Origin: Malacoraja senta
Taxonomy: Eukaryota
DNA length: 64,000 nucleotides
Assembly (NCBI GenBank): GCA_038087875.1
Contig: CM075998.1
Coordinates: 558,001-622,000 of the forward strand
Direction of reading: 5' to 3'
The stretch's first letter is position 1. The number at the start of each line of letters is the position of its first letter. Positions 40,301 through 64,000 of this stretch are shown piece after piece. The position numbers and the translations under genes are program-made. The notes under the pieces were generated by a model. The model was given only the letters and a program-made list of their open reading frames with translations, made no database searches and was not told the origin of the DNA.

Positions 40301-43300
40301 CAAGAGCAAGAGGTATTTCAAATCATACAACATTAACTCGAGTTTAAAACCTACAAAAGAAAATGAATGTATTTTAAATAAAACAATTCCTGCAAATTAT
40401 GGAAATTAAGGGATGTCTGTGGCAACCAATCACAAGGAAATTAAAACCACTTCGAGATGTCATGAACCAGATTCTATCAACCATTTCAAACACCCCCGAT
40501 TCAACAGGAGATACAACAAAGTGTTCATGACAAGTATACGAATTAGCACCAATATGGTTGGGTGCCCGATATTTGCAATTCCATCCAACACATTTTTACA
40601 GCTGCAAATACTTTAGAAAGTTCGCACTCAGTACCTTACCTTTTCACTTTCTTGTACTGCATTTAAGTCTATTTCTCTAACATGATTCTGAAGGCCCCCC
40701 AAAAGAACGGAGTTATTGTCAGTGAGAAGGAGGCTGTGCATGTCCTCCGCTTCATCCATACTAAATGTGGAAAAAAAGCATGCAGTTCAATATTTGGAAC
40801 AGACAAGAATATGTAAAAAAACACCAAACAGGCAAACAGAAAATGCAGGAAACACTCAGCAAGTGTTTACTTTGACGTTTTCTCTTCCTTCTTAGAGGTG
40901 CCAACTCATTCTGAAATACAATGACAGAAGTGTCAGCAGTCCTCAGATATCTCAAATGTTCATTCCTCATGCAAGTTTGAGTAATCACAAAAAGGTAAGC
41001 TATTTAAATGGCAGATTAAAGGCAATGTCTTGCAGCCATTTAATATGGTTCCTTACAGGTATCTACAGATCACTAGGCCAATGGTGGCACAAGACAAAGC
41101 AGCAATCAAGTCCCACAGGAACAGTAATTCAAATGAGGAACAAATATTCTAGTTAACACCTGCACAAAGGAGGGGGGGCGAAAACTTGGTGCGCTGGGGG
41201 AAAGATGGGAATAAAACTGCAGGTATACAAGCTTAGTAAATGTGTTCAGCTCTCTTCACTTAAATTTATAGTTTTACTTTAAAAACTGCAGGTGCAAATA
41301 TTTAAAAGAAACTTACACATAATCAAACATTATAAGACCTCCTCGAGTAAAGCACTTGAGATTATTCTTATTCAAAAAGAGCACTCCACTTTCTATGCTC
41401 TGTATCTGACGAATGTCATCTGTAGCATTAACTTGAAAGGAGGAGTATCGTTCCATAGTCGGACCAAAAAAGGAGGTTGCATGGCCCTAGAGAGAACGTT
41501 CATAAACAAATTTAGTTACGCATCTATGAAGGTACGGCTGAAGCACCAGCAAAACAAAAATCAGCTAATTAGTAGCATATCCTTTTTAGTTACATCAATG
41601 ACAATTCAAAAGACTTCGAATTTCATTTCAGATGTAGTTTAGGGTTACGCCCAAATCAATTATCTATACTGCAAGGTCATTTCAGCACACGCCTTGGTCA
41701 CTCCACAAAGCTGCAGAACATCTCAGAAGACCACCTTAACATCTCAGTTCAACTTTACAAAAAATAGTTTAAGTATACAAAGGCCTTCAAATGTTTAGGA
41801 ATGTTTTGGTGATGTTAGCAACCAATAAAACACAAACAAAAACAAAATGCATTGAGAACAACTTTTCAGAGAAGCTGTCCGCTTTTGTGTATGGTTCAAG
41901 ATCAACAGCACATAGATTTTAAGTGAAGGTTAAAAGATACAGTGTGGAGGTGAAAAGGGAAAAATGCAAGTAAAAAGCCTTTTTTGAAGCATACAAAGTG
42001 GTTATGATCTAGGAACAATCCATCTGCAAGTGGTGAAAACAGAGTCAACCAGAACTTTCAAAATTGAATTGGATCAGTACTCAAGGGAAAGATAATTTAG
42101 AGAAGTCATGGGATAAAGATGGAAGGAATGGACTGAATCAAGTGATCTACAGGAAGCCTGCATGGATTACGACACATCTATCTATAGTAAGAATTCCACG
42201 AGTTAATTTGAACTAACATTTAAACCACAGCTGGATGACCAGAACTGTGCACCGTACTCCAAGCGTGGTCTCGTCAATTACCTGTACAGTTGCAACATGA
42301 CGTCCCAACTCCTATATTCAATACCCCAATTGAATACCAACATTTAAACCACGACATGGCAAGTTCAATCAGGGCAGGAGTTGCACAGTAAATCCCAGGG
42401 CTCTGGAGTATGTTGTAGAACAGAGAGACCTAGGGTACAAGTAATTAGTTCCCTAAAAGTGGCAACACAGGTAGACAGGGCAGTGAAGGTGGAATTTGGC
42501 ATGGTTGCCTTCATCAATTGGGGTATTGAATACAGGAGTTGGGACGTCATGTTGCAACTGTAAAGGTCATTGGCGAGACCACACTTGGAGTATGGTGCAC
42601 AGCTCTGGTCATCCAGCTGTACAAAGAATATCATTGAGCTGAAAAGAAGTTTCACGTCGATGTTATGGGACTCGAGATCTTGAGTTATAAAGAGAGTCTG
42701 GATAGGCTGGGGCTTTGTTCCCTGGAGTGTAGATGAGTGACCTAACACGGGTATACAAGATCATGACAAGAGTCGGTAAGTTGGATAGTCAGTCATTTCC
42801 TGGGTTAAGGGAGTCTAATACTAGACGACTAAATTTAGACACAGGAAAGGCGAGGTGAAAGACTTAAAAGGGACTGATGAACAACTTTATCCACACAGAG
42901 GGTGGAGCATATATGGAACGAGACGCCAGAGAAAGTTGTAGAGGCAAGTACAATTACAACTTCTACAAGGTATATGGATAGGAGAGGTTAAGAGAGACAT
43001 GGGCAAAACACAAGCTTGAATAGACATCTGGTCAGTGTAGACATGTTGGGCCATTACACCTGTTTCCATGTTGTAGAACTCTAATGACTATAACAGTGGA
43101 AGGGGAAATATGATCTATAGTCACAATTATAAACCAAAGGTTGACATTGCATTTATATGCTTTTCACTGCTGCAGTGTATAGTTGCCTAGCTAGGAACAT
43201 GCCCATCTCTCACAAGCTGATGTGGGGAGAAGTTGAATGGGATTTGAGGATTATTTTTCAAATAAAAATGTTGGAAAAAAGCTTTCTGTTAATCTCCCAC

Positions 43301-44174
43301 AGCCACTCTTGCATCAGCAGTGGAGCAATGTGGAATTAAGCACTTTTCATTCCACATCCACCATTCATTCATTAATTAACATTCAAACATTTTTAGGGAT
43401 GTAACGAGGTTGAGTGCTGTCTGAGTTCTGGGAAGTGATCAGAGCCGTTAGATTAATTTCAACTGGATTAATCATTACATAAAAGGGGAAATTCCATGGT
43501 CCAAACAGCTGAGAAGTAATACATCATTCTTTCAAACCTAGAGCACAGCACATTGCACGTTCTAAACAGAAGCTCTTAACAGCTCAGTTTCAATCTTAAT
43601 GATATACATACACCGCATGTCATCCAGGCATTCTTTGCTTGTTCTTGATTCCTAAACCACTTAATTTTGTTACTTTAGATAGAGAAATAAAAGCAGAGTA
43701 GCAAATTGGTGCATTGTGAATTATCATCCTGCAGTTCTTGATCATCCTAGCTGCACAGAGAAGCGATGGAAATACAATCTCTTCTCCAGCACTGCCCAAA
43801 ATGTCCCTTCTAAACCAGGTATTGCCAATCTTTCTTGGTTGCAGAAGCTGTACTGTACTTACCCCATGATTTCCCACCCAAAGTAATTCATCTTGAAGGT
43901 CAAAATGCGATGCAGTTACAGGGACTCCAACTTCTGCAACGACTGTGTGTAGTTCTGAATACATGCCTTCCACAAGATGTACAGATTCAGACACAGAGAC
44001 CGACATGCCATCTAACTGGACACCTTCTCCTTCCAATTCCATATTCTGCAGCAAGGTCGGGTCAAGTCTGGGATCCAGCGAATGCTCAATTGAGCGGTCC
44101 AAGGAAGCACTGATGCCAGGATGCAGAGGCGAGGTGTATTCTCCAAGGCCAGAATCAAGACCATTAAAATTCAT
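10314..44174 (-). CDS. PAN2: PAN2 poly(A)-specific ribonuclease catalytic subunit (WD40, inactive UCH/USP and DEDD exonuclease domains); 25 coding exons, about 1205 aa
   Basis: Exons traced by hand with GT/AG boundaries and consistent phases; total 3618 nt. Motifs include [53 protein letters not shown] and [12 protein letters not shown]. The terminal exon is less certain. Confidence 0.97.
12594..12794 (-). CDS. PAN2: PAN2 coding exon 24
   Basis: [21 protein letters not shown]...[14 protein letters not shown]; 201 nt. Confidence 0.95.
13340..14285 (-). mobile_element. Degenerate CR1 LINE
   Basis: Antisense [12 protein letters not shown] and a 3' end of type aacataagaacataggagcaggagta. Confidence 0.7.
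13768..13860 (+). repeat. Short Penelope terminal-repeat insertion with 14-bp target-site duplication
   Basis: ACTCTTGAATGTCT at 13758-13771 and 13860-13873. Confidence 0.8.
14433..14526 (-). CDS. PAN2: PAN2 coding exon 23
   Basis: [31 protein letters not shown]; 94 nt. Confidence 0.95.
16729..16897. repeat. Palindromic Penelope-derived element (ribozyme core deleted)
   Basis: Inverted arms gacacaaaat...tcaggcagcatc and gatgctgcttga...attttgtgtc. Confidence 0.7.
17769..17948 (-). CDS. PAN2: PAN2 coding exon 22
   Basis: [17 protein letters not shown]...[14 protein letters not shown]; 180 nt. Confidence 0.95.
18363..18506 (-). CDS. PAN2: PAN2 coding exon 21
   Basis: [29 protein letters not shown]...[11 protein letters not shown]; 144 nt. 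Confidence 0.95.
18620..18777 (-). CDS. PAN2: PAN2 coding exon 20
   Basis: [29 protein letters not shown]...[13 protein letters not shown]; 158 nt. Confidence 0.95.
19398..19488 (-). CDS. PAN2: PAN2 coding exon 19
   Basis: [30 protein letters not shown]; 91 nt. Confidence 0.9.
20050..20109 (-). CDS. PAN2: PAN2 coding exon 18
   Basis: [20 protein letters not shown]; 60 nt. Confidence 0.93.
20970..21107 (-). CDS. PAN2: PAN2 coding exon 17
   Basis: [15 protein letters not shown]...[19 protein letters not shown]; 138 nt. Confidence 0.93.
22486..22627 (-). CDS. PAN2: PAN2 coding exon 16
   Basis: [47 protein letters not shown]; 142 nt. Confidence 0.88.
22820..23955 (+). mobile_element. Degenerate Rex1/Babar-type LINE RT and 3' end
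   Basis: Remnants of [29 protein letters not shown] and [10 protein letters not shown]. Confidence 0.75.
24140..24213 (-). CDS. PAN2: PAN2 coding exon 15
   Basis: [24 protein letters not shown]; 74 nt; phase fits neighbouring exons, sequence poorly conserved. Confidence 0.8.
25062..25160 (-). CDS. PAN2: PAN2 coding exon 14
   Basis: [33 protein letters not shown]; 99 nt. Confidence 0.92.
26155..26261 (-). CDS. PAN2: PAN2 coding exon 13
   Basis: [35 protein letters not shown]; 107 nt. Confidence 0.92.
27304..27452 (-). CDS. PAN2: PAN2 coding exon 12
   Basis: [32 protein letters not shown]...YPDINTA; 149 nt. Confidence 0.92.
27929..28128 (-). CDS. PAN2: PAN2 coding exon 11
   Basis: [21 protein letters not shown]...[15 protein letters not shown]; 200 nt. 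Confidence 0.93.
28263..28500 (+). mobile_element. CR1 3' fragment
   Basis: ggaacatgccatcaagggagatggtggaagcagatgcaatag...catttagac. Confidence 0.5.
28654..28782 (-). CDS. PAN2: PAN2 coding exon 10
   Basis: [10 protein letters not shown]...[24 protein letters not shown]; 129 nt. Confidence 0.93.
29120..30100 (+). mobile_element. Old CR1 fragments
   Basis: Degenerate matches to the CR1 ORF2 end and 3' UTR seen at 45300-45800 and 47205-47625. Confidence 0.55.
30326..30445 (-). CDS. PAN2: PAN2 coding exon 9
   Basis: [40 protein letters not shown]; 120 nt. Confidence 0.95.
31132..31251 (-). CDS. PAN2: PAN2 coding exon 8
   Basis: VPYKLKEMD...[10 protein letters not shown]...VPKKYRK; 120 nt. Confidence 0.93.
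31800..32398 (-). mobile_element. CR1 LINE 3' end
   Basis: [20 protein letters not shown]...ERLSRLELY...[11 protein letters not shown]. Confidence 0.88.
32828..34631. mobile_element. Cluster of GC-rich non-autonomous elements with Rex/Babar-like 3' stem-loop tails
   Basis: A + copy at 33367-34183 ends in a hairpin, aatgacaaataaa and (aatctct)n. An inverted related tail lies at 32828-33030; related GC-rich pieces lie at 33039-33219 and 34184-34631. Confidence 0.65.
34632..34883 (+). mobile_element. Internally deleted HE1/V-type SINE; 5' part duplicated at 33220-33366
   Basis: gagacccgggttcaatc B box, ccaaagacatgcagg core and CR1-like tail. Confidence 0.75.
34901..35192 (+). mobile_element. 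Full-length tRNA-derived SINE (HE1/V-SINE type)
   Basis: ggtggcgcagcggtagag A box, ggttcgatccc B box, V-domain-like core and tail gggcctgtttccacactgtatctctaaact. Confidence 0.88.
35551..35647 (-). CDS. PAN2: PAN2 coding exon 7
   Basis: [32 protein letters not shown]; 97 nt. Confidence 0.93.
36954..37296 (-). CDS. PAN2: PAN2 coding exon 6
   Basis: [10 protein letters not shown]...[14 protein letters not shown]; 343 nt. Confidence 0.95.
38283..38550 (-). CDS. PAN2: PAN2 coding exon 5
   Basis: VSLRDLR...[25 protein letters not shown]...AIISQS; 268 nt. Confidence 0.95.
38795..38982 (-). mobile_element. tRNA-derived SINE, 5' part
   Basis: Reverse complement reads gcacagtggtgcagctggtagagccgctgcctc...ccaggtttgatcctgacc. 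Confidence 0.75.
39335..39670 (+). mobile_element. CR1 3' fragment
   Basis: gacctgatagaagtttataaaattatgagaggcatagatagg ([11 protein letters not shown]). Confidence 0.7.
39951..40028 (-). CDS. PAN2: PAN2 coding exon 4
   Basis: [26 protein letters not shown]; 78 nt. Confidence 0.93.
40640..40760 (-). CDS. PAN2: PAN2 coding exon 3
   Basis: [14 protein letters not shown]...VQESEK; 121 nt. Confidence 0.93.
41317..41486 (-). CDS. PAN2: PAN2 coding exon 2
   Basis: [10 protein letters not shown]...RGGLIMFDY; 170 nt; AG/GT boundaries. Confidence 0.93.
42355..43092 (+). mobile_element. CR1 LINE 3' portion
   Basis: [18 protein letters not shown]...[13 protein letters not shown] followed by the 3' UTR. 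Confidence 0.8.
43863..44174 (-). CDS. PAN2: PAN2 coding exon 1
   Basis: ATG at 44174; MNFNGLDSG...LWVGNHG followed by gtaagt. Confidence 0.95.
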
Positions 44175-50234: not shown

Positions 50235-51130
50235 AAAATGCTGTAAGCACTCAACAGGTTAGGCTTCATCCCTGGAAAGAGAAACAATTCATACTTCAAC
50301 TTGAAGACCATTCGTCAGAACTGGAAAAAGGGGTTAGCTTTAAATTGCAAAAAGAGTGGTAGGGAATGGATAGGAGAAAGGGAATAGCTCTGATAGGGTG
50401 AGGCCAGGGTTGTCATACAGATAAACTGTAGATGGTCTGATATGTTAATGGAAATGAGAGAAAGTTAGCATGACGAAAGAATCATAAAAGCTATAAAATG
50501 AAGGCAGTTAGCGAGCACACAAACAAAGAACATAAAAGCTATGAAACGCTAAGCTGTAGGAAATGTCCAACAGGTTTGGCGGGTGCTAAGGGAGAGAAAA
50601 CAAAAAAGGGTCAATATTACAGATTGATGACCTACATTAAACTGCCCACTTCTAATTCATACAGAGAGCACAAGTTATCTCTAGTGATAAACCCAACATT
50701 GAGTCCAGAAGGCTACAAAGTTCCCAGATGGAAGATGAGGAGGTATTCTTCAATCTTACCTTGGATCTCTGTCTCCATCTCAGTGAATAGATTAGTGACA
50801 AACATCCAATACAATACCACAGATCCCCACGGCTATCTCAACTGTATTTTCTGCTTCCTGCAAGGACTCCATTTTATTCTCTCAGTCCCTCAGTCTCCGT
50901 CACATCTGCTCCGACAACAAAACTGTCAACACAGGTGCCTCTTAAATTCATTCTTCCTGAATCATGGCTTCCAATCTACCATAACTGGTAGAACCCTTGA
51001 CCAAATCTCATCGATTTTCCACACCTGGACAGAGCAAGGATTCACTTTCCACTTTGCATTCAACCAAATATCTCTCGTAATTTCCACCACCTTCAAGAAG
51101 ATTTCACCATCAGAGACATCTTCCCCTCCT
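50235..51130. mobile_element. Old rearranged Penelope fragments
   Basis: Degenerate terminal repeat at 50240-50330 and a remnant resembling YKPTDSHGYL (IQYNTTDPHGYL). Confidence 0.55.
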
Positions 51131-51611
51131 CTGATCTGGAAGAGTTTAGGGGCTGAGAAGCATACCTAAGAAGGATAACATGAGGGCAAAAATGGGCAGG
51201 ATATAGCCGGGAGATAAAATTACGGAGAATCCAAAGAGATTTTATAAGAGATATGACATTAGAGAGAGAAAAGAGTCCCTCAGAAACCAAAGCAGACATC
51301 TATGTGTGGGGCCACAGGAGGTGGGCAGGTAATCAATGATTGTTTATCCATTGTTTTTACAGTGGAGAAGGCTATAGGAAGCATGTCATATAGCTAGAAA
51401 GAGTGCAAAAATGACAAGGATTTTGTCAAGACTTGAGGGTCTTAGCTATAAGGAGAGGTTGAGCAGGCTAGGACTCTATTTCTTAGATAGACATTATCTC
51501 TGCACAAACAAAACCCAAGGTTAGGATCTAATCTTGGTCCCCCGAGGTGTGAGATGGTTGCATTAAATGCTGAACTATCTGGTCTCAGAAGGAAACAGAC
51601 TCAAGCTTAAT

Positions 51612-51747
51612 GTGTAAGAAGGAACTGCAGATACTGGTTTAAATCGAAGATGGACACAAAAAGCTGGAGTAACTCACCAGGACAGGCAGCATCTCGGGAG
51701 AGAAGGAATGGGTGACGTTTCAGGTCGAGTCTGAAGAAGGGTCTCTA
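51612..51747. repeat. Penelope-derived partial palindrome
   Basis: gacacaaaaagctggagtaactc...gtgacgtttcaggtcga joined to gtctgaagaagggtctc. Confidence 0.7.
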
Positions 51748-52789
51748 TTTTCCTGACCAGTGCCTCAATATCCTTCATTAACCAGGGTTCTATAATCCTG
51801 CCAGCCTTGCACTTCACTCTAACAGGAACTGGCTGGCCTTGAACTCTCCCTATCTCACTTTTAAAAGCCTCTCACATGCCAGACGTCCCTTTACCTGCAA
51901 ACAGCCTCTCCCAATCAACCTTTGCAAGTACTTGTCCAATGCCATCAAAATTTGTGGACCTGTCCCACATTTTCTAAGAACTATTTTAAAACTCGAAAAA
52001 CAATAATGTGTTCGCCTGTGGAGAAAAAAGCTGCTGAATGGGACCAAAGGGATCACTTAACGAGAAGCAATGATAGCATTGAATACACTGAATAGCCTCC
52101 TTTTGCACCATAACAATTCCATGATATCACAATTTTCCTCCCTCAAATAATACTCCCTCTAAAAGCAGATTTACTGGACAATCACCTCAGTTGTAAAGAT
52201 GGCCACCTCATTTACATCTGCATTTTCAGTACCGGGTAAAAATTGAATGTCGATAAACAGGAAGATCCTTTGTTATGGTTACTGGAGGGCACACATTAGT
52301 GAATTCCAGTTAATATGGATTGATTTTTTTTTTTTGATCTATGACTGTGAGGTGAAATTGACCTTTATCAATGTTTAATCAAAATTGAATCCAACCCAAT
52401 ATGAGCAACAGAGAAAGGTTACAGCACTGCACAGAATCCAGTGTGCATAGAGCATTTGAGAACCACAACACAGTGCTATTTAATATCAAATCTTTCTTCC
52501 TTTGGCAAGGGAACTAAGTTGAACTATGTGACGGCACAACCAGCAAGCATTCATGTCCTGTGGCTATTTACAAACCAAGCTCCAGTTCACAGAAATCTGT
52601 TGCAAAGAGAAGCAACGCCTACGATATATGTGTATAACATAACATGTTTTACACCTGATGCTGCGTTACTGTTGACGATACTTCCCTCGACATTTACCTG
52701 TAACATTTTGGAATTCACATAAATGATTTAGGTTTCTGTGTTGCTGCGCAATTTGTGGAATTACCCTTAAGGAGGATATCACAAGGTGA

Positions 52790-52897
52790 TTTCATTTGAG
52801 GTTCATTTGACTTCATTTTGAGGTTCAAATTTGTTTTGAGGTTCAAATGACAATAAACGGTATTGTATTGCATATTGTATTGTATTATATTGTATTG
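52790..52897 (+). repeat. Short tandem repeats and LINE tail (tattg)n
   Basis: ttcatttgagg-like units followed by aatgacaataaa and (tattg)n. Confidence 0.6.
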
Positions 52898-53469
52898 ATG
52901 TTTCTTTAATGATTTATATCATTTTATTTTTTCCTGTTGTACTTTTCTCCCCTAACCAATTTTTCCTTTATCGCTCGTGAAGCAGCTGACCATTGACTGC
53001 AGTTTGGCCTCACAATCACACGTTGCCTCCCTCTGTGGCTACCCCTCATGTTTGTTTTAACAGGATTCAAGTTTTCACCTCACAATCACAGATTAACAAA
53101 AAACTTCCATCCTTAACAACCAAAATTAATGTGTGCCTTTCAGTAAATGTAACAAAAGATCTGATATTCTTATTCTATTTTTCATTTTTTAATTATGAAT
53201 GTAATGAACACGACAAAAAAAAACATTTGTAAATTTAGGCAATTTAGGCTGACAATTCATTATATAAATCTTTTATTGGTACCCCTTTATGAATAAATTG
53301 TCTGCCCTTACCCTACTGATGTTGTACAATCCTGAAAATTCATATGGATAAAAACTGAAATAAACACCTTAAAAAAATCAGATTCTGCCCATTTAGGGTT
53401 TGAGACTTGATGATGCTTACCTGTCTGATTTTCACCACTGAGTTTGAAGGTTTTGAATTTAAAATCATA

Positions 53470-53700
53470 AATCCAGGGAGTACAGCAGAAGTGCTGCCTT
53501 TCAGATTGGATGGTTAACTTGTTCTTTTGGGTGGACATGTAAGATCCTGTGGCACCATTTAAAAATTAGTGGGGCAGATATTTCTGGTGATCTTCCCAAA
53601 TGTATCCCTCAACCAACCCCAACAACAGATTAGCTGATAATGTATCTCATTGTGCTATGTGGAGAATTTTAGTTATGTTAAAGATCATGTATAAATGTAA
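53470..53700 (+). mobile_element. Deu-domain SINE, degenerate
   Basis: ggtggacatgtaagatcctgtggcac...tatccctcaaccaac. Confidence 0.6.
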
Positions 53701-55183
53701 GTTTTTCATTTCTGTGACTGCAGGCTGTGTTTTGATTATTGTTGCACAATTATCAAATCAGAATTGGGTTGAAAGGCAGTGGTAAATATGTAATAAGGGG
53801 TTTTAATAAGGTACATTGGGAAATTAAATACTATTCCCACTGGTTGGTGAGTCAATATTAAAGGTCCTAAGTTAAAGATCATCCCCAAAAGAACAAAGGG
53901 ACAGGTTTGGGGAGTTTTTCTGTTTTTTAAGGGGATGGAATGCCCGAGTATAACAGTGAAGGAAACAGAATCCCTTATAACTTTTAAAAGGGAAGTAGAA
54001 ATAGATTTTTTTTTAAGGGATAATAACTGAATGGTGACACATCTCAAGTTTGCTAAATCCACTTCAGGGCATTTGAGGGCCAGCTGTGTGGAGGAGGGTA
54101 TCAAGGCATGTGTAGGTCCAGATTGGGTGAGGATGGAGTCTTCCATTCCTTACAGGACATCTGTCAGCAAATTGGGATTATGATTACAATCTGACAGCAT
54201 TGTGGTCACTTTATAATCCTTTAGTTCCAGATTTTTAAACATTTATTTTGAATTATTAAACTGCTGTGGTGGTGGTTTAAACTCAATTTGATTTGGAATA
54301 TTGGTCCAAGTACTCAGCAAACTTTAGCAGTTGCCTACTTGAAGCAGAGATTATAATAAAACATAAAAGAGGATTGGATATGTATTTTATAATATACAGT
54401 GATAGGAGGAAATGGGATTAAAGTAGATAAACTCAATTGATGTTCCAACACTGTGATAAGCTTGAGTTACCTCCTTCGCTGTAAATACTGTGATTCTACC
54501 TGTCAGTCATATTTTTCCAGCAAAATAGTTCCTGTGCAAAGCAAAATGAAAGATGTATGTTGGTCCATTCACAGATGCATCCAAACTGTTCCAGTTTTTC
54601 CTTTGATCCTTGAGGGGAAAATGATTTATTACTTGGGCACCAGAGCGATTACTTCAGGATTTTAATGCAAAACCTAGGCTCATGGGTAGAAATTTGGACT
54701 CCATGCAACAACTAGAGGTTTGTACAATTTGTCCTGGGCTGTCACACTGGGAGAGATCACAAAGCAGCTGGAAGCTGAGTTATTCTGGTAACTGTGCTTG
54801 TTCTATCATTACAGAATTAAGAGTGCCTCTCCTTCAGGTCCAACTTTCAAGAGAAATGTTGAGGCATCCTGAATGATTTGAATTCACTACTTTTGTTTTG
54901 TGGTAATGTTCAGTACAGGACCTGTTGACACATAAACCTTTTAGAGAAGTTACTGAAACTGAGAGTTTTGAGCAAATTGACTAAGCATCACCAGGATTTC
55001 GCCTCAGCAAAATTTAGCAGTTGCCTCATTTAAGACTAGAAGTAGATTAGCTTTCCTGCATTGCTGGGAAACGTAACCTTTATGAGCTTATTCCTTCAAT
55101 GATAATTTCTGTTATTTTTAATCAGAGAGTCTTACAGTACACATGTAAGGTATTTAGCTTCACTTGCCACCCTGCTGCTTTCT

Positions 55184-55208
55184 CCCCCCCCCCCCCCCCC
55201 CCCCCCCC
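55184..55208. repeat. Poly(C) tract
   Basis: About 25 consecutive C; a similar tract lies at about 21396-21417. Confidence 0.9.
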
Positions 55209-56600
55209 AGAGTTCTGATCTTTCATTTTCAAGTAAATATGCAGTTGCTTTTTGAAAGTTATTTTGGTCTTCATAAATTCTATTATTTGGGCTGCTGATT
55301 ATGCCAATTTATTCAGAACTCAAAATTGCCTCAGGGTGAAACTTGAGTGTGATGAGTTATACAACTTTTTTTTTTACAAATCTATAAGATATTAATAAGA
55401 GTGGACAATATCTGCTGAACAGATCTGCAGCCTAGGATGTGTAAAACCTCCTTCTGGTATAAAATATTAGCCTCTTCCAAACATAATGTTTCCCAGATTA
55501 AGATAACTAAACTATGGTTAACAAGATTTGCCAACATTCAGCATTGCGCAAAAAGTGTGATACAATGCCTGTGGATTTTGATATGGCTTGTTTAACAGAG
55601 AAAGTTCCAAAGCTGTAGAGTTGAGCTATACTGAATGTAATCTCATTCAAGATGAAGTTGGTTATGTTACTTGAAAAATAGTCCATTAAGCTTTTACGTC
55701 AGAGAATAGAATTTTAGATTCCCTGATGGGATGTCAGTCCAAAGAGCAATGAGCTCACTCACCAGATTGTATTATTTTTCAGTTTGTTGAAATTTAATTC
55801 CAGCTCAATCATGCTCAGTGACCACTTCCCCTAAAATTGACTGGGAGCCTTCAGTTAAGTACAGCCACTTGAAATACGTGGGAATTAAAAACCAACATGT
55901 GCTGTTTAAACCTAAAAACTTCCGTGATTTAAGGAGCAAAATCAGGAGGAATTTCCACCTTATCACAAGAAAGTTTCTTACAACCCCCTCCCCACTATCA
56001 CTACCCCTACCCCAAATCCCACTTCAATGGCTGAATCCACTGTCATGCAGAGCAGGCATTTCCCAAGTTTGAGTTCCAGTCTGACCTCACTTAGCTAATC
56101 TCACCAGTGCAGCAGTTGTAGGTCTAAAATTGGCCTCAGTATCACAAAGCTAGGGAGGATTAGGTTCGGCAAGATTTATGCTTCTGACCACTATCCATTA
56201 GGAACTAACTGTCTCCATGCACATATGTTTCATTTAACAAGAGTACTGATGCCTTTTGTTTTAACACACTTGTAGGATATCTTAACTGGAGAGATGATAT
56301 AGTGGAGTATATATATGCAGGATGGAGTTGCCCAGTGAGTCCTCCATATTAATGCCAGACCCCATGAAGTCTTATAGTATTTGGAAAAACATGGCCAAGG
56401 AAATATCCTCCTGACTACCATCATTCAATTGATGAATCTGTGTTCCTCCATGTTGAAAAACACTTAATGAAGCACCGAAGCAAGGACATAGAATGTACTC
56501 TGGATGGGAACTTCAATGTCCACCACCAAGAATGGTTTGATGGTACTCACACAGACTCAGCTGGCCTAGTCCTGTAGCAGAGTTGCCAAATTGTCTGTAT

Positions 56601-56658
56601 GTACACACACACACACACACACAGGTTTTACACAGAGAATATTATATATATATATATA
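56601..56658. repeat. (AC)n and (TA)n microsatellites
   Basis: Directly visible in the sequence. Confidence 0.85.
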
Positions 56659-56886
56659 TTCCCTCACAAAGAAATCTGTGATGTTGCAGTATAACCATAT
56701 GTGAGTGGTACTCAGAGCTATGGCAGCTACCAGGGAAGCTGTAACCTGTCCTGTTTGCACCGTGCCATCTCAACCACAAATGCAGGAGATGTTAACTGTA
56801 CTCAGATATCAACAGTTTAATGATGGAGGGAGAGGGAGATATAACAGGTAGCTGATTGTTCTCCTTGCCATAGTACTATGTTTACA

Positions 56887-58575
56887 TAGGTGGACACAAA
56901 ATGCTGGAGAAACTCAGCGGGTGAGGCAGCATCTATGGAGAGAAGGAATTGGCAAAGTTTCGGGTCGAGACCCTTCTTCAGACTGATGTCAGGGGAGGGG
57001 GTAGGACAAAGAAAGAATGTAGGCGGAGACAGTGGGACTAGTGGGAGAACTGGGAGGGGGGGGGGAATGAAGAGAGAGAGCAAGGGCTACCTGAAGTTAG
57101 AGAAGTCAATGTTCATACCGCTGTGGTGTAAACTACCCAAGCGAAATATGAGGTGTTGTTCCTCCAATTTGGGCTGGGCCTCACTCTGACAATGGAGGAG
57201 GCCCAGGACAGAAAGGTCAGATTGGGAATGGGAGGGGGAGTTGAAGTACTGGGCCACCGGGAGATCAGCTTGGTTAAGAAGAACTGAGTGGAGGTGTTCA
57301 GCGAAACGATTGCCGAGCCTGCACTTGGTCTCGCCGATGTAGAAAAGTTAACACCTGGAACAGTGGATGCAGTAAATGAGGTTGGAGGAGGTGCAAGTGA
57401 ACCTCTGCCTCACCTGGAAAGACTGTTTGGGTCCTTGGATGGAGTCGAGGGGGGAGGTAAAGGGACAGGTGCTGCATCTCCCGCGGTTGCAGGGGAAAGT
57501 ACCCGGGGAGGGGGTGGTTTGGGTGGGAAGGGACGAGTTGACCAGGGAGTTATGGAGGGAACGGTCTCTATGGAAAGCAGAAAGGGGTGGAGATGGGAAC
57601 ATATGGCCAGTAGACGGATCACTTTGGAGGTGGCAAAAATGTTGGAAGATTATATGTTGTATACGATGGGTGATGTGGTGGAAGGTGAGGACAAGGGGAC
57701 TCTGTCCTTGTTACGAGAGGGGGGAGTGAGAGCGGAGCTGTGGGATATCGAGGAGACCCTAGTGAGAGCCTCGTCTATAATGGAAGAATAGGGAACCCCC
57801 GTTCCCTAAAGAATGAGGACATCTCCAATGCCCTGGTATGAAAAACCTTGTCCTGGGTGCAGATGTGGTGTAGACTGAGGAATTGGAAGTAGGGGATAGA
57901 GTCTTTACAAGTAGCAGGGTGGGAAGAAGTGTAGTCAAGATAGCTATGAGAGTCAGTATGTTTGTAGTAGATTTTGGTCAATAGTCTGTTTCCTGTGATG
58001 GAGACGGTGAGATCTAGAAATGGTAGGGAGATGTCGGAGATGGTCCACGTGAATTTGAGTGCAGCATGGAAAATAGTGGTGAAGTTGATGAAGTCAGTGA
58101 GTGCTGCATGGGTGCAGGAGGTAGCACCAATGCAGTCATCAATGTAGCGGAGGTAGAGTTCGGGGATAGGGCCAGTGCACGCCTGGAACAGGGATTGTTC
58201 GACGTACCCTACAAAGAGGCAGGCATAGCTAGGGCCCATGCGAGTGCCCATAGCTGCGCCTTGGATCTGGAGGAAGTGGGAGGAGTCGAAGTAGAAGTTG
58301 TTGAGGGTGAGGACCAGCTCTGCTAGGCGGAGGAGAGTATTAGTGGACGGAAATTGGCTGGTTCTGCGGTCGAGGAAGAAACGGAGGGTTTTAAGACCCT
58401 CCTAGTGGGGGATGGAGGTGTAGTGTGACTGGACATCCATAGTATAGATGAGGGAGTGGGGGCCTGGAAAACAGAAGTTATTGAAGATACGAAGAGCGGG
58501 TGAGGTGTCTTGGACGTAGGTAGGGAGGGATTGGACCAGGGGGGTTAGGATGCAGTCAAGGTATGTGGAAATTAA
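56887..58575 (-). mobile_element. Penelope-like retroelement (RT, GIY-YIG endonuclease and 3' terminal repeat), 5'-truncated, disrupted
   Basis: TMDVQS.YTSIPH, MGTRMGPSYACLFVG, YLRYIDD, LPFLD, YYK.TDSH.YL and TCTSSNLIYCIHCSRC*LFYIGETKCRLGNRFAEHL; terminal repeat at 56887-56990. Confidence 0.92.
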
Positions 58576-59204
58576 TTTGGTACATATCCGTTGTGCTGCT
58601 GCAAGTAAGAATTTAATTGTTCTGTTTCGTGACCTAGGACAATAAAACACTCTAAAAAACGAATGGCCAAAAAAGCAAAAAAACGACCCCTTGACTCATA
58701 TGTTAAAAGTGGTGGCACTGCGAAAACTGCTAATGTCTGGAATTGGAAATGTTTACACGTGATCTGTCTATCTTACAACAGTGTTTCTGGATAGTAGGGG
58801 GGTATTTCAAAGTATATTTGTAAAGGCAAACAAATGGCCACTGGACCTTATCCGTTGATAGGGGTTCCATTTCGCTTTTTTGGCACAGTTTTTATCTGAC
58901 AAAATCGCCATTACGCTACCCATTCCTTTCAGTTCCTTTTTATTCGTCGATGAGTTGTGGGCATTACTGGCAAGGTCAGCATTTATTACCTACGCACAAC
59001 TGCCCTTGAATTTGATTAACATCATTATTATGTCACCAGAGCTCTTTGTGAAGCTTTCTGCTCTCCGTGTTTCAAAAGCCCACCACTCATCCCCCATGCC
59101 AAATTCAGCTGCTAATATGTTGACACGGAATATATTTTAAAAATTGACATGACACCCATAGCTAACAAACAGCCACTGAAATCTCAGTCTGACTTCCAGT
59201 TTCC

Positions 59205-59335
59205 CTCTCCCCTGACTCTCAGTCTGAAGGGTCTCGATCCGAAACGTCACCCATTCCTTTTCTTCAGAGATGCTAACACTGAGTTACTCCAGCTTTTTAT
59301 GTCTATCTTTGGTATAAACCAGCCTGCAGTTAATT
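59205..59335 (+). repeat. Penelope terminal-repeat fragment (core partly deleted)
   Basis: cagtctgaagggtctcgatccgaaacgtcaccc...gagttactccagc. Confidence 0.7.
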
Positions 59336-59599
59336 TCTACACTTTCCAGCATCCATCCATTGCCTAATTTCTCCTGAGAAAAATCATTAAAAACATAAAA
59401 TACGCGTAGAGTTTGAAGGGAACGATGGTGTTCATATTCACCTGAATACGATATGTTGGAACATTATTCCACGCACTACTTCTTACTTTTTGGGAGCGAA
59501 ATTATATCCCGCTAAAACTCCAACGCTTAACACTTTGTCGGGTTTTTCTGCCATTTCAGTTGTGACTCTTTGCCCTTTAATTGAATAACTACTCTATTT

Positions 59600-59945
59600 C
59601 ATGAGGAAATAAATGTCCTCGTGAAAATATCGTACAATGACATTTCTGACGCAAGTGACCACAGGAATTCGTAACCCAGCGATTGACGCAAACCCACATA
59701 ATGAAACATGGCCCGCTGATATTTTCGAAACAAATTACTCCCCCAGTGGAAAGTGTGGGTTGTCTTTTTTTTGTTGCAGAAGAGGTGGACATGAGTGAGA
59801 CAGGTAAATTAGTGTAAGGTAGATTTTAAAAAAAAACTTCTTCAAACAAATTAGTGTAGGTAGGTTATTTGTAAAGAACCCCCACTCTCCAATACTTGAA
59901 CTGGGAAATTCCGTTGTACCAAGAAGGTCGCTTATAAGGCGGGAC
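59600..59945 (+). promoter_or_regulatory. Inducible cytokine-type promoter of the IL23A-like gene
   Basis: NF-kB GGGAAATTCC 59903-59912, TATAA 59933-59937, CCAAT 59889-59893, two TGACGCAA (C/EBP-ATF-like) at 59647 and 59684, GAGGAA at 59603, GGAAAGTG at about 59748. Confidence 0.7.
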
Positions 59946-60019
59946 CTGTAGTGTCTTGTATTGGATTGTGCTCGACAATTCGCTGTGGTTTAGTGCTGGG
60001 CTGTGACTTTTCTGAAGGA

Positions 60020-60175
60020 ATGATGGAGAGATGCTTCGGAATAGTGGCTCTGGTCTGGCTGCTCAGTGTAGCTGGGATCGTAGCGTCAGAGACCGGTCAG
60101 CAGCCCAGTTGGATATCCTGTCGAATTCTTTCCAGGAATCTCACTTCCAAGGTTTCTAATTATACACACAAACCG
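60020..60175 (+). CDS. IL23A: IL23A-like coding exon 1 (signal peptide and helix A)
   Basis: MMERCFGIVALVWLLSVAGIVASETGQQPSWISCRILSRNLTSKVSNYTHKP followed by gtgagt. Confidence 0.85.
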
Positions 60176-63108
60176 GTGAGTGGCTGCAAAATGAATACCA
60201 TTTACCTTATTTGTTTCTGGCTTAATCAATAAATAATTCTGACCACGCCTAACTGCAATGAACATAAGTTTTAGTGATGTTAAAATGTTTTTAAGTGGGT
60301 AACTGCAAATCATTTGAAGAATCGATATATTTTCAGTTAAGTGTTATAAAGCGAATTTCCACTATTTTAAAACGTTTACTTATTTGGAACATGAACTAAA
60401 TATGCACAAACTATTCGCAATAAATGAATTTCAGTGGAGATATTAATAACATTTAAAGGGCATTTGGACAGGTATATGGATAGGAAAGGTTTAGAGGAAT
60501 ATGGACTAAACGCGACCAGGTGGGACTAGTGTAGATGGAGCACCTTGGTCCGCATGGGAGAGCTGACCCGTGCTGTACGACTCTGTCACTTATTATAACG
60601 TTTCATTCATTTAATTTTTCTAAAGGAATTTAGAGTGGTGCCGGCTAAATCATTTAGCACGTCTGTAGTGGTTAAAATAGGAGATCGGGGCTGAACAGAA
60701 AAGTTTAAAATCACTGATGTGTGAGACAGCCAGCGCGGAGAAATGATGGAAAACATTATTCCTTTTACGAAATTAACTATCCCTTAGAGGTGATAACTGT
60801 ACTCTCCAAAATAAATTACATCGGAGGAAATATTCTCCAGTAAGTATAGCCTGTGATACTAAATCAGAAGATGCTGGAAATGTTAAGCAGGCCAGTTAGC
60901 ATCTGCCAAGAAAAAATGCGAGTCCGCGTTTCAGGTCGTTGACCAGGGGTAGATTCTTGAATATTTTCGTGTAATTATTTGAAGAACAGTTACTTTCAAG
61001 AATATATAAAATTATTTTGGATATGAAACCTCCAAATCGATATAAAAGTACTGATCAACGGATTATAAAATCATCGTATATCGGGATAAAACACCGTGCT
61101 GGAGGAACTCAGCAGGTCGGGCAGTACCTTGGAGGATATGGACAGGCGACCTTTCAGGCGGGACCCTTCTTCAGACTGATTAGATTATTCAGAACGTATA
61201 TTGTGATAACCTGTTTCATATTGTTAATTCTCAAATCTGCAGACGATGAGTTCCGCATATAAATGTGCCGAGAGTCTCTCGCAGCCTGAACTGAGCAGGG
61301 CAGATGATTCGGGTCATCGCTGCACGCATTCACTCCACTCTCATCAGAACTCAACAGGACATTTTTGATTAACTGGCCCAAGTGACCTTAAATCAATTCA
61401 TCTCGCTCTGTTGGTACTCAGGGGTGCGTTGAGAACAGCAGGAATGCTCACTCCCAATTAAATACATTAAATGATTGACCGAATTAAAACTGCCTTTTAA
61501 TTTTGAGTGATATATAATGCCCGCTCACTCCCTCTAACGCCACCTCTGCTCTTTTAATGAGGAATCAAATTCTCATGAACGCAACAACATTTTAGACTCT
61601 CCTTATCCTCCTCCTCACGGGAGGCACTGCACTGCACAGCACAATGCAGTGGGTGCGCGATATTGTGCTCTGGTAATCATTTCCAAGTTTGCTGAATCAT
61701 GCGGGCACATCAGGAATAATATTGTCACCTAACGCAGGGTTTTGATTTGAAAGAAGAATGGTGCATTCACCCCACCGCACCAAAAGATTTACACCAAAAG
61801 TCTGAAGAAGGGTTTCGGCCCGAAACGTTGCCTATTTCCTTCGCTCCATAGATGCTGCTGCACCCGCTGAGTTTCTCCAGCATTTTTGTGTACAAAAGAT
61901 TTACAAGATTGCGAGCCATTGCTTCCATATGACCGACGCAAACCTCTCTGCATCTGCACCCTGCCTCCTTTTTAATCCCCATAGATATTGTTTGACTTGC
62001 TGAGTGTTTTATTCATGCAAGGAATGAGGACTTCGCAGGCTGAGCCATCATTTAATGACCTGTCCCTAATCGAACTGGAGAAGGTGGTGGTGCCTTCTTG
62101 AATCTACTGCAGTCCTTGAGGTGCAAATGTTGATCCAGGATGTTGATCCAGTAACAGTGAAGGAACGACAATATATTTCGGTGCGTGGATGGGCGGGCAA
62201 CCTCCAGGCGGTGATGTTCATGTTTTTGCTGTCCTGGTCCTTCTAGCTGGTTGAGGTCATGGGTTTGAAAGGTGCTGTCTGAGTCTTGGTAAGTTGACAC
62301 GGTGCATTCTGGAGTTTTGTTTTGATTCTCTCTGACCGAGCCTTTGGTAACTTACCAAAAGAACTCCTGATTTGGTTCATTTATTTGACATCTGTGTTGC
62401 TTACACATCTTCGATAAAACACAAGTTGTTGTACAGAGTTCTAACGGACAGAGAACGGGTTAGGTGGATGACAGGGAGGTGGTGAATTCAACAAAACAAC
62501 ACAAGAGTATTTCTTAGTGGTCGTTGGTTGTTAGGAGGTTCAGACTTGCAGCTGGGTTAAGTGGCAATCAGCACTGTGTCAGATGTCAATAATATGATCA
62601 TGAACAACTAACTAGTAGCCACTAATTTTACCACTAATTTCCATCCGGCACTCAAATTCACCTGGACCATTTCAGACATCTCCCTACCGTTTCCAGATCT
62701 CACCGTCTCCATCGCAGGTAACAGACTACTGACCGACATCTACTACAAACCCACTGACTCCCATAGCTATCTTGACTACACTTCTTCCCACCCTGCTTCC
62801 GACATCAGTCTGAAGAAGGGTCTCGACCCGAAAAACATCACCCATTCCTTCTCTCCATAAATGCTGCCTCACCCGTTGAGTTACTCCAGCATTTTGTGTC
62901 TACCTTCGATTTTATCCAGCATCTACAGTTCTTTCTCACACATAACTAGTAGCATGTTTGAGTCACAAACACAATAATCAGAACTTTGATTTTATTTTCT
63001 CGGCAGGAGGGCTGTTCGGAAAATCTTCAGCTGAATGGCAGTGATAATATCCCACGCATAGAAATCAGTGACAACTGTGACCCCAACACACTCAGGACTG
63101 TGCCGGAG
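60020..63108 (+). CDS. IL23A: Interleukin-23 alpha subunit p19-like cytokine, exons 1-2; continues beyond the window
   Basis: Exon 1 (60020-60175) encodes a signal peptide plus PSWISCRILSRNL (human PAWTQCQQLSQKL). Exon 2 (63007-63108) encodes DNIPRIEISDNCDPNTLR (human NDVPHIQCGDGCDPQGLR). Both introns are phase 0, exon sizes (156/102 nt) are close to human, and the gene is head-to-head with PAN2 as at human 12q13. Confidence 0.85.
60445..60588 (+). mobile_element. CR1 3' UTR fragment
   Basis: catttggacaggtatatggataggaaaggtttagagg...gtgctgtacgactct. Confidence 0.7.
61089..61180 (-). repeat. Penelope terminal-repeat fragment
   Basis: ...tttcaggcgggacccttcttcagactga. Confidence 0.65.
61800..61892 (+). 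repeat. Penelope terminal-repeat insertion with hammerhead-like core and 13-bp target-site duplication
   Basis: CAAAAGATTTACA at 61781-61793 and 61893-61905. Confidence 0.8.
62620..62942 (+). mobile_element. Internally deleted Penelope (RT fragment fused to terminal repeat) with 11-bp target-site duplication
   Basis: TNFHPALKFTWTISDISLPF...IYYKPTDSHSYLDYTSSHPAS joined to gacatcagtctgaagaaggg; TAACTAGTAGC at 62609-62619 and 62943-62953. Confidence 0.85.
63007..63108 (+). CDS. IL23A: IL23A-like coding exon 2
   Basis: Acceptor ttttattttctcggcag, then EGCSENLQLNGSDNIPRIEISDNCDPNTLRTVPE, then gtaag. Confidence 0.85.
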
Positions 63109-64000
63109 GTAAGCTGCGACTGGCAGGATTGGCAGTAGATTTGTCATGTTGCTGGAGTAATGACTGAAAGTGCATCAAATCCCACTGCAGCTGTAGGAGT
63201 GGTTATTTTTTAGAGAAAAGTTAGTCTCTGTAACTATGAAGCTGGTGAATTGTTAGAAAAGCCCATCTGGCTTACTGATGTACTGAAGAGAAGAAACCTT
63301 AGCTGGTTAAGGCTTTGATGGGACTCTTGTCCCATATTATGTAGGATGCTCTGGTTGCTCTCTGATGAATCACCTTGACAAACCAATAGGGGAATAAATG
63401 CTACCAACATTCCTATACATATGATTTGATTTAAACCATTGTGCTCTGGTTAGTGCTGGATATTTTGGCTTGCTTGAAGACTAATCTCATCTATTAATTT
63501 TCTGGTTGAATGTAGTTTGTCCCCATGATATTTAAAAAAATCTATTTTTGGTAATCCTTTATTTCCATTCCCCTCCTCTTCCTGAGTATGATTGGCCCAC
63601 AGAAATTGTGGAGTTGTTTAATGGTGGTCCTTGGTTAACAGGACAAAAAGAATGGAATAAAAGACAACGGTAGAAAGGCATTTTTCTGACTGAAGGTTTG
63701 TGATCAGTGGTGTTCCACAAGGATCAGTGCTAGGCCCTTTGTTGTTTGAATGATTTAATATAGTGAGATTTCAATCCCACCTTCCCTCCCCATCTCCATT
63801 GCTCTGAAATGCTTTTCTTCCTTTCGATCAATGTATAAATTTCTCACCATATAGCACAACCTGAAACGCAGGCTTTGACAGACATTCACTGATATTGCTG
63901 ACTTCCACTGTTTCTTTGTCTGGCTTCTGGAAGAGTCATGTGGAGGATGAATTTAGCGCACAATTTGTGTTTAGAGAAATGTCCCCTCTGCCACTCTGCA

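What the first reader, a model, noticed from the sequence alone, without database searches (positions are those of the whole stretch)
60020..63108. Hidden IL-23 p19 (IL23A)-like cytokine gene in a probable cartilaginous fish, head-to-head with PAN2
Seen: a signal-peptide exon ending in a strong donor, and a 102-nt phase 0-0 exon 2.8 kb downstream. Spliced, they give WxxCxxLSxxL and PxIxxxDxCDPxxLR. Known: these are p19 signatures, human IL23A has similarly sized phase-0 exons 1-2, and it lies divergent from PAN2 next to STAT2. Inference: this is a highly diverged IL23A orthologue that automated annotation could miss. It bears on whether the IL-23/Th17 axis dates to the root of jawed vertebrates, which has been debated for chondrichthyans. 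Whether it is already annotated in this species cannot be told from here.
Basis: partly seen in the sequence, partly recalled or inferred. Interest (0 to 1): 0.85.

Follow-up and report, generated by a model that had tools for sequence, protein, structure and literature searches.

The report
Skate IL23A (p19) gene, first two exons
The two exons are real and are the start of a skate's interleukin-23 p19 (IL23A) gene lying back-to-back with PAN2 as in humans, but this gene is already published for cartilaginous fishes and named by NCBI in many sharks and rays, so it is an ordinary, correct gene call.

Summary
Observation confirmed. Exon 1 (60020-60175, 52 codons) and exon 2 (63007-63108, 34 codons) sit exactly where stated, are phase 0, and have good splice sites. 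They carry the stated motifs.

Assembled transcripts from two related species join 60175 directly to 63007.

The two exons are 96% and 100% identical in protein to exons 1-2 of NCBI's 'interleukin-23 subunit alpha-like' of the little skate Leucoraja erinacea. That full-length protein passes the Pfam IL23 threshold (49 bits against a cut-off of 27; IL6 scores 25). A profile of ten elasmobranch orthologues hits human p19 in the PDB at 2e-12, against IL-6 at 7e-3.

PAN2's first coding exon lies 15.8 kb upstream on the other strand. Exons 3-4 lie beyond the window end, about 0.3 and 1.8 kb further on by comparison with L. erinacea.

The gene is not 'hidden' in the clade, though. At least ten elasmobranch species already carry the NCBI name. 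Redmond et al. 2018 (PMC6238376) already showed p19 orthologues in cartilaginous fishes.

No predicted protein of this species turned up in the database, so it may be unannotated here. The scan noted the same gene twice more in this genome (s1-178000, s1-182919); those notes concern the missing interchain cysteine, which I confirm by alignment.

Low interest.

The parts
59903..59912 (+). kappaB-consensus decamer GGGAAATTCC, 108 nt upstream of the ATG (possible inducible-promoter element; inference only)
   Evidence: Identical in L. erinacea and unchanged in four related runs. The consensus is not enriched in the window (5 found, 6.3 expected), and the whole promoter is 96% conserved, so there is no statistical weight.
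59933..59939 (+). TATA-like box TATAAGG, 81 nt upstream of the ATG
   Evidence: Conserved in L. erinacea. No ATG lies between 59791 and 60020. A transcript contig of a relative starts at 60003.
60020..60175 (+). IL23A exon 1 coding part: signal peptide plus helix A (WISCRILSRNL), 52 codons, phase 0 donor CCG|GTGAGT
   Evidence: 96% identical to L. erinacea IL-23 subunit alpha-like, with the same exon end as in that gene model. Transcript contigs of two relatives end the exon here.
60176..63006 (+). Intron 1 (2,831 nt), largely high-copy SINE-like and other repeats
   Evidence: word depth reaches 10^5-10^7 at 60406-60556, 61010-61160, 61765-61915 and 62520-62972. 94.9% identical to the L. erinacea intron, with 605 gap columns.
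63007..63108 (+). IL23A exon 2: A-B loop with the IPRIEISDNCDPNTLR motif, 34 codons, phase 0-0
   Evidence: Pfam IL23 E=0.026 as the only hit. 100% protein identity and 101/102 nt identity to L. erinacea exon 2. The loose ends of two transcript contigs after 60175/60176 read exactly this exon's first 30 letters.
63109..64000 (+). First 892 nt of intron 2; the gene runs off the window (exons 3 and 4 expected about 0.3 and 1.8 kb past the end)
   Evidence: No exon-3-like frame in 63109-64000. In L. erinacea, window position 64000 aligns to L001:13995, and exons 3 and 4 lie at about L001:14306-14458 and 15771-15962.
43863..44174 (-). PAN2 first coding exon (MNFNGLD...WVGNHG, 104 codons, donor GTAAGT): the divergent neighbour, its ATG 15.8 kb from the IL23A ATG
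   Evidence: (PF20770 PAN2_N, E=8.5e-15).
41313..41456 (-). Part of PAN2 second coding exon
   Evidence: (PF20770, E=3.1e-20, profile positions 48-94).

Best explanation
These are exons 1 and 2 of the IL23A gene of a skate closely related to Leucoraja erinacea. IL23A encodes the p19 alpha chain of interleukin-23. The gene has four phase-0 exons over about 6 kb, and the window holds the promoter, exon 1, intron 1, exon 2 and the start of intron 2. Shown here: the exons, their splice sites, use of the junction in mRNA of relatives, orthology to annotated elasmobranch IL23A-like proteins that meet the Pfam IL23 threshold, and the divergent arrangement with PAN2 that human IL23A also has. Inferred from what is established for mammalian and teleost p19: the product is a secreted long-chain four-helix-bundle cytokine made by activated myeloid cells. 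It pairs with p40 (IL12B) and signals through IL-23R/IL-12Rbeta1 to JAK2/TYK2 and STAT3, supporting IL-17-type responses. One detail differs from mammals. The residue aligned with human C54, the cysteine that links p19 to p40, is Ile or Val in all elasmobranch sequences. Two other cysteines, at residues 55 and 167 of the precursor, are invariant or nearly so, so the covalent link to p40 may be placed differently or be absent.
For: Exons, phases and splice sites read directly. Spliced junction: contigs of 1,017 nt (run X7, depth 18.4) and 763 nt (run X8, depth 23.1), from two related species, follow exon 1 to 60176. They then continue with AGGGCTGTTCGGAAAATCTTCAGCTGAATG, which is exon 2 from 63008, with about 590 nt of further mRNA. 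A DNA-like run of the same organism as X8 (X9) holds only the unspliced form, which argues against a retrocopy. phmmer with exon 1 against 1.84 billion representatives found a 207-aa shark protein (P0002, E=1e-6). It scores Pfam IL23 46.5 bits (cut-off 27) and human p19 in the PDB at 6.6e-10. With P0002 as query, 14 elasmobranch proteins came back, 10 of them named interleukin-23 subunit alpha-like by NCBI or UniRef. Window exons against L. erinacea P0014: 96% and 100%, with the same exon boundaries in its genomic locus L001. All 10 aligned orthologues hit Pfam IL23, best E 8e-14. IL6 hits are weaker (25.4 bits for P0014, below its cut-off of 27), and IL12 appears in only 1 of 10 at E=0.014. 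The profile against PDB gives IL-23 p19 at 2.1e-12 and IL-6 at 6.6e-3, with no p35, p28 or G-CSF. The AF2 model of the L. erinacea protein has four long helices (30-45, 86-107, 115-136, 162-188), and the best PDB fold match is p19 chain 6wdq_B. PAN2 N-terminal exons are on the opposite strand. Human IL23A, STAT2 and PAN2 form one locus (PMC8760939). Published phylogeny places cartilaginous-fish sequences with p19 (PMC6238376).
Against: Only 86 of about 200 codons are in the window; exons 3-4 of this species were not seen. No RNA run of this species itself was found: X1 and X2 are DNA-like with uniform depth through the intron. The window's fragments alone do not reach the Pfam cut-off (exon 2 scores 15.1 bits, exon 1 gives no hit) and find nothing in the PDB on their own. 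Fold comparison does not separate p19 from IL-6 or G-CSF (E 4e-3 to 1e-2 for all), and the Atlas feature search gives only the superfamily. I could not build my own tree because no bony-vertebrate sequences were retrievable. The canonical interchain cysteine is missing. Exon and intron divergence from L. erinacea are too similar (97-99% against 95-97%) to show selection; there are 2 non-synonymous and 4 synonymous differences.
Confidence: 0.93

Rival explanations
1. The locus is IL23A-derived but is a decaying or non-functional copy in this species. Exons 1-2 are intact, but the rest is lost or broken beyond the window.
For: Exons 3-4 are not in the window. No protein of this species appeared in the database searches. 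No RNA run of this species was found.
Against: Both exons have an intact frame, start codon and all three splice sites. Exon 2 is 101/102 nt identical to the expressed, annotated L. erinacea gene. The flanking intron 2 aligns colinearly up to the window end.
Confidence: 0.04
2. It is another IL-6/IL-12-superfamily alpha chain (IL-6, IL-11, G-CSF, p35 or p28) rather than p19. In that case the 'IL-23 subunit alpha-like' names are automatic mislabels.
For: The fold search ranks IL-6 and G-CSF almost level with p19. Pfam IL6 gives sub-threshold hits in all 10 orthologues. Atlas feature neighbours are LIF, G-CSF-like, IL-6-like, IL-11 and IL-12 alpha clusters. No tree was built here.
Against: Pfam IL23 scores 49 bits against 25 for IL6. 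PDB profile hits for p19 are ten orders of magnitude better than for IL-6, and no p35, p28 or G-CSF appears. p19-specific motifs align residue for residue, including WxxC, CDPxxLR, xCLxxIxxGLxxY and ARVFxH. The position next to PAN2 matches human IL23A. Published Bayesian and ML trees support p19 identity.
Confidence: 0.03
3. It is a chance pair of open frames with cytokine-like motifs and no gene.
For: None beyond the short length of the pieces.
Against: Spliced transcripts in two related species use exactly these boundaries. An annotated orthologue has identical exon boundaries.
Confidence: 0.003

Closest known systems
Interleukin-23 subunit alpha-like of Leucoraja erinacea (NCBI model, P0014, assembly GCA_028641065.1, CM054046.1)
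   Same: Exon 1 has 50/52 residues identical and exon 2 has 34/34. Exon boundaries are the same, intron 1 is of similar size, and the promoter region is the same, with GGGAAATTCC and TATAAGG.
   Different: It is a different species: about 5% nucleotide divergence in introns, with residue changes E3Q and G26A. The NCBI model starts 33 codons further upstream at an ATG that this window lacks (AAG at 59921-59923). That extension lies upstream of the TATA-like box and would bury the signal peptide, so it is probably a start-codon artefact.
Human IL-23 p19 (IL23A; PDB 3DUH, 3D87, 6WDQ, 8CR8)
   Same: Signal peptide followed by helix A WxxCxxLSxxL. A-B loop xPxIxxxDxCDPxxLR. Cysteines equivalent to C14 and C58 are in the window, and C70, the helix-D Trp and ARVFxH are in the orthologues' exons 3-4. 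The first two exons are phase 0 and of similar size. The gene is a divergent neighbour of PAN2.
   Different: About 22% identity overall. Human C54, the link to p40 (PMC9731863), aligns with Ile or Val. Human C22 is absent. There is an extra cysteine at residue 55 (nearly invariant) and another at residue 167 (invariant in the ten aligned). Intron 1 is 2.8 kb and full of repeats. The distance to PAN2 is 15.8 kb.
Cartilaginous-fish IL-23 p19 reported from shark transcriptomes (Redmond, Macqueen and Dooley 2018, PMC6238376)
   Same: The same gene family in the same clade. Their trees support p19 orthology and an origin in the jawed-vertebrate ancestor.
   Different: That work used transcriptomes and a predicted proteome without genomic context. 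This window adds the PAN2 linkage and the exon structure for a skate.
IL-6 (Pfam PF00489) and other long-chain gp130-type cytokines
   Same: The same four-helix-bundle superfamily. Sequence hits are weak (19-25 bits), and fold scores are nearly equal to those for p19.
   Different: Below the Pfam IL6 cut-off and far weaker than the IL23 hits. Different cysteine pattern and different genomic neighbourhood.

Membership tests
IL-23 subunit alpha (p19, Pfam PF16649) | Score above the Pfam IL23 gathering threshold (27 bits) | tested here: met
   Met for the full-length orthologues: L. erinacea 49.2 bits, shark P0002 46.5 bits, and all 10 members hit IL23. The window's own fragment, exon 2, gives 15.1 bits at E=0.026 as its only hit. 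That is below the cut-off because only 34 residues are scored.
IL-23 subunit alpha (p19, Pfam PF16649) | Closer to p19 than to IL-6, IL-12 p35, IL-27 p28 or G-CSF | tested here: met
   By profile scores: PDB p19 at 2e-12 against IL-6 at 7e-3, the others absent. Pfam IL23 49 bits against IL6 25 bits. No tree of my own could be built; a published tree supports p19. Fold search and Atlas features do not discriminate.
IL-23 subunit alpha (p19, Pfam PF16649) | Secretory signal peptide followed by a long-chain four-helix bundle | tested here: met
   Hydrophobic N-terminus in exon 1. The AF2 model of the L. erinacea orthologue has four helices, pTM 0.63 and mean pLDDT 62. The top PDB match is p19 chain 6wdq_B, TM 0.55/0.72. 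Model confidence is only moderate.
IL-23 subunit alpha (p19, Pfam PF16649) | Intrachain disulfide C58-C70 (human mature numbering) | tested here: met
   The C58 equivalent is the Cys of DNCDP in exon 2 (window residue 76). The C70 equivalent (ETCLKK) is in exon 3 of all orthologues, outside the window. Human cysteine roles come from PMC9731863.
IL-23 subunit alpha (p19, Pfam PF16649) | Interchain cysteine to p40 (human C54) | tested here: not met
   In the HMMER alignments human HIQC aligns with RIEI or RIEV, so there is no Cys at that column in any of 14 elasmobranch sequences. Other cysteines (residues 55 and 167, conserved across the elasmobranch sequences) could substitute; that was not testable here. 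The covalent link is a feature of mammalian IL-23 rather than of the Pfam family, so this does not remove membership.
IL-23 subunit alpha (p19, Pfam PF16649) | Helix-D tryptophan (IL-23R contact in human p19, from my own knowledge of the IL-23:IL-23R structures) and C-terminal ARVF motif | tested here: met
   Present in all orthologues (DW..NC....RFQSFSSLVARVFGH) and aligned to human PWQRL...AARVFAH. They lie in exon 4, outside this window, so this was not seen for this species.
IL23A orthologue (gene-level) | Conserved neighbourhood: divergent from PAN2, with STAT2 on the other side | tested here: inconclusive
   The PAN2 half is met (human locus). STAT2 is not in the window, and no STAT-like frames were evident among the ORFs of the 10 kb downstream of the L. 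erinacea gene, which hold mostly LINE fragments. That flank may simply be too short.
IL23A orthologue (gene-level) | Four-exon structure with phase-0 exons 1-2 that is transcribed and spliced | tested here: met
   Four tblastn blocks in L. erinacea. Window exon phases. The spliced junction stands in transcripts of two related species. This species' own RNA was not available.
IL-23 cytokine (function) | Heterodimer with p40 and signalling through IL-23R/IL-12Rbeta1 | not testable with these tools
   Needs protein biochemistry. IL-23R orthologues in cartilaginous fishes are reported in PMC6238376.

The most novel reading that the evidence does not exclude
Elasmobranch IL-23 may be assembled differently from mammalian IL-23. 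All available shark, ray and skate p19 sequences, including this window's exon 2, lack the cysteine that bonds p19 to p40 in humans. Instead they carry two lineage-wide cysteines: residue 55 at the start of exon 2, and residue 167 in helix D. The heterodimer would then be either non-covalent or linked through a relocated cysteine. Separately, this skate's gene may be unannotated, and it gives genomic (PAN2-linked) proof of IL23A orthology that the 2018 transcriptome study lacked. A 2025 survey (PMC12162339) missed this entirely, tracing p19 no further back than a snake.
Probability: 0.5. Interest if true: 0.35.

Novelty: already known. Interest (0 to 1): 0.15.

Why it matters
It confirms, with genomic linkage to PAN2 and with exon structure, that the IL23A locus predates the split between cartilaginous and bony vertebrates. 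That conclusion was already drawn from shark transcriptomes in 2018 and is reflected in NCBI annotation of many elasmobranch genomes. The practical value is small: a correct gene call for this skate, a probable start-codon error in the L. erinacea and R. longicauda models, and a pointer to the altered cysteine pattern, which could be tested biochemically.

Tried and rejected
1. phmmer of each exon alone against PDB sequences found only noise.
2. The first run search, with the whole 3.3-kb stretch, returned only DNA-like runs with even depth through the intron and thousands of repeat-driven joints. It gave no splice information. Repeating with exon 1 alone found the transcript-bearing runs.
3. 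I looked for exon 3 in 63109-64000 in three frames and found none.
4. A profile search of ten elasmobranch p19 sequences against 5.8 billion clusters returned only the same 14 elasmobranch proteins. No bony-vertebrate p19, p35 or IL-6 sequences were available for a tree of my own.
5. Foldseek against the PDB and the Atlas feature search place the protein in the IL-6/gp130 long-chain cytokine superfamily but cannot tell p19 from IL-6 or G-CSF.
6. STAT2 was not seen among ORFs of the 10 kb downstream of the L. erinacea gene.
7. Exon-versus-intron divergence from L. erinacea has too few differences to show purifying selection.
8. The kappaB consensus is not enriched in the window.
9. The two other phmmer hits, P0001 and P0003, are long repetitive proteins matching a 17-23-residue stretch several times. 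I rejected them as spurious.
10. The large ORFs between PAN2 and IL23A give nothing but one reverse-transcriptase fragment.
Full report
WHAT IS IN THE SEQUENCE.

- An ATG at 60020 is the first ATG after 59791. It sits 81 nt downstream of a TATAAGG box.
- It opens 52 codons with a hydrophobic signal-peptide-like start, followed by SWISCRILSRNLTSKVSNYTHKP. The exon ends at 60175 before GTGAGT.
- After 2,831 nt, a pyrimidine-rich acceptor (..TTTTATTTTCTCGGCAG) precedes a 34-codon exon at 63007-63108. It reads EGCSENLQLNGSDNIPRIEISDNCDPNTLRTVPE and is followed by GTAAGC.
- Both exons are phase 0-0.
- No further exon-like frame lies in 63109-64000, so the gene runs off the window.

IS THE JUNCTION USED? 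A first search for sequencing runs with the whole 3.3-kb stretch found only DNA-like runs. These came from the window's own organism (X1, X2, no differences) and from relatives, with even depth through the intron and enormous depth on the intronic repeats.

Searching again with exon 1 alone found two small, transcriptome-sized runs of two other related species, X7 and X8. I laid them on 59800-60400.

- X7 holds a 1,017-nt contig at depth 18.4, and X8 a 763-nt contig at depth 23.1.
- Both follow exon 1 to 60176 and then leave the genome with AGGGCTGTTCGGAAAATCTTCAGCTGAATG. That is exon 2 from 63008; the G at 60176 equals the G at 63007.
- About 590 nt of further mRNA follow in both.
- A large DNA-like run of the same organism as X8 (X9) holds only the unspliced form. 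The joined form is therefore RNA, not a retrocopy.

This is direct evidence for the 60175|63007 splice, although in sister species rather than in this one.

WHAT GENE IS IT? Exon 2 alone gives one Pfam hit, IL23 (PF16649), at E=0.026 and at the right place in the profile (positions 36-57 of 158).

phmmer of exon 1 against 1.84 billion representative proteins found a 207-aa protein, P0002, aligned from its first residue (E=1e-6, 55% identity).

- P0002 is NCBI's 'interleukin-23 subunit alpha-like' of Chiloscyllium punctatum.
- It scores 46.5 bits on Pfam IL23 (cut-off 27) and 6.6e-10 against human p19 chains in the PDB.
- With it as query, 14 elasmobranch proteins came back. Ten are named interleukin-23 subunit alpha-like. 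Three are unnamed models: Scyliorhinus torazame, Cetorhinus maximus and Rhinoraja longicauda.

The window's exon 1 is 96% and exon 2 is 100% identical to the Leucoraja erinacea protein, P0014.

I fetched that gene's locus, L001.

- The window aligns colinearly with it at about 94-96% from 54.5 kb to the window end.
- The L. erinacea model has the same exon 1 end and the same exon 2 boundaries.
- It has two more exons that would lie about 310 and 1,770 nt beyond position 64000.

The window therefore belongs to a skate closely related to, but distinct from, L. erinacea. The differences are E3Q and G26A in protein, with 2 non-synonymous and 4 synonymous changes over the two exons.

p19 OR ANOTHER FAMILY MEMBER?
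- All ten aligned full-length orthologues hit Pfam IL23 (best E 8e-14).
- All ten also give a weaker IL6 hit. For P0014 that hit scores 25.4 bits, below the IL6 cut-off of 27. Only one of ten touches IL12.
- A profile of the ten against all PDB sequences gives human p19 at 2e-12 and IL-6 at 7e-3. Nothing appears for p35, p28 or G-CSF.
- An AlphaFold model of the L. erinacea protein has four long helices (pTM 0.63, pLDDT 62). Its best PDB match is p19 in the IL-23 receptor complex, but IL-6 and G-CSF score almost the same. The fold confirms only the superfamily, and the Atlas feature search likewise.
- I could not build a tree, because the profile search returned no bony-vertebrate sequences.
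- The published trees of Redmond et al. 2018 support p19 identity for cartilaginous-fish sequences (BPP 0.95, UFBoot 97).

NEIGHBOURHOOD. On the minus strand, 44174-43863 encodes MNFNGLD...WVGNHG and 41456-41313 encodes the next part of PAN2_N (E 8.5e-15 and 3.1e-20). PAN2 and IL23A are therefore head to head, with their ATGs 15.8 kb apart. The space between holds retroelement debris. Human IL23A, STAT2 and PAN2 form one tight locus (PMC8760939). STAT2 could not be checked. It is not in the window, and no STAT-like frames stood out among the ORFs of the 10 kb downstream of the L. erinacea gene.

HOW IT MOST LIKELY WORKS. Shown here: a transcribed, spliced, four-exon gene for a secreted four-helix cytokine of the p19 family. 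Inferred from mammalian and teleost IL-23: it is expressed in activated myeloid cells, pairs with p40, and signals through IL-23R/IL-12Rbeta1. Redmond et al. also found an IL-23R orthologue in cartilaginous fishes.

One difference deserves a line. In human p19, C58-C70 is the internal disulfide, C54 links to p40, and C14 and C22 are free (PMC9731863). In the HMMER alignments the skate and shark sequences keep the C14, C58 and C70 equivalents. They have Ile or Val at the C54 column and no C22. They carry two other conserved cysteines, at residue 55 (EGC, the third codon of exon 2) and residue 167 (LNC, helix D). This agrees with two sibling notes of the scan, s1-178000 and s1-182919. Whether the p40 link is relocated or absent cannot be told from sequence.

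NOVELTY. The identification is right, but the thing is known.
- p19 in cartilaginous fishes was published in 2018.
- NCBI's pipeline finds and names the gene in many elasmobranch genomes, including a skate whose protein is 98% identical (84 of 86 residues) over these two exons.
- No protein of this species came back from the searches. The gene may therefore be unannotated here, but that cannot be decided with these tools.
- A 2025 survey (PMC12162339) traced p19 only to a snake, so the literature is not uniformly aware of the fish genes. That is a sensitivity failure of the survey rather than an open question.

VERDICT. This is a correct and well-read gene call of low novelty.

Noticed in passing
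window 59921-59923; L001:10001-10099: The NCBI model of L. erinacea IL23A-like (233 aa) starts at an ATG that exists only through an A-to-T change relative to this window (AAG here). It lies upstream of the TATA-like box and adds 33 residues in front of the signal peptide. The Rhinoraja longicauda model (242 aa) has a similar extension. Both are probably start-codon artefacts, helped by an upstream frame that stays open for 40 codons.
   Followed up: partly
window 59903-59912 and 59933-59939: A perfect kappaB-type decamer, GGGAAATTCC, lies 21 nt upstream of a TATAAGG box in front of IL23A. It is unchanged in L. erinacea and in four related runs. This fits an NF-kappaB-inducible cytokine promoter, but the consensus is not enriched in the window (5 against 6.3 expected) and the whole promoter is 96% conserved.
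   Followed up: partly
window 63013-63015 (Cys55) and the column of human C54 at 63064-63066 (Ile): Elasmobranch p19 lacks the p40-linking cysteine of human p19. It has two other cysteines that are invariant or nearly so: one here, and one in helix D outside the window. In the ten aligned full-length orthologues the mature protein keeps five invariant cysteines, as many as human p19 has, but differently placed.
   Followed up: partly
window 60406-60556, 61010-61160, 61765-61915, 62520-62972: Intron 1 carries several very high-copy repeats, with summed contig word depth of 10^5-10^7 in whole-genome runs of four related species. Two copies of the same SINE-like unit (..GAAGAAGGGTYTCGRCCCGAAA..) lie at about 61800-61890 and 62810-62900, and similar units occur elsewhere in the window.
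   Followed up: no
window 44175-60019: The 15.8-kb PAN2-IL23A spacer is mostly retroelement debris. One example is a reverse-transcriptase fragment at 48995-49414 (Pfam RVT_1, E=1e-6), and the other long ORFs have no family match. It aligns colinearly with L. erinacea from 54.5 kb onward at 94%.
   Followed up: partly
literature (PMC12162339): A 2025 survey of IL-12-family genes in 405 species lists a snake as the oldest traceable IL23A/p19 and calls p19 a late arrival. This conflicts with the 14 elasmobranch proteins found here and with Redmond et al. 2018.
   Followed up: partly
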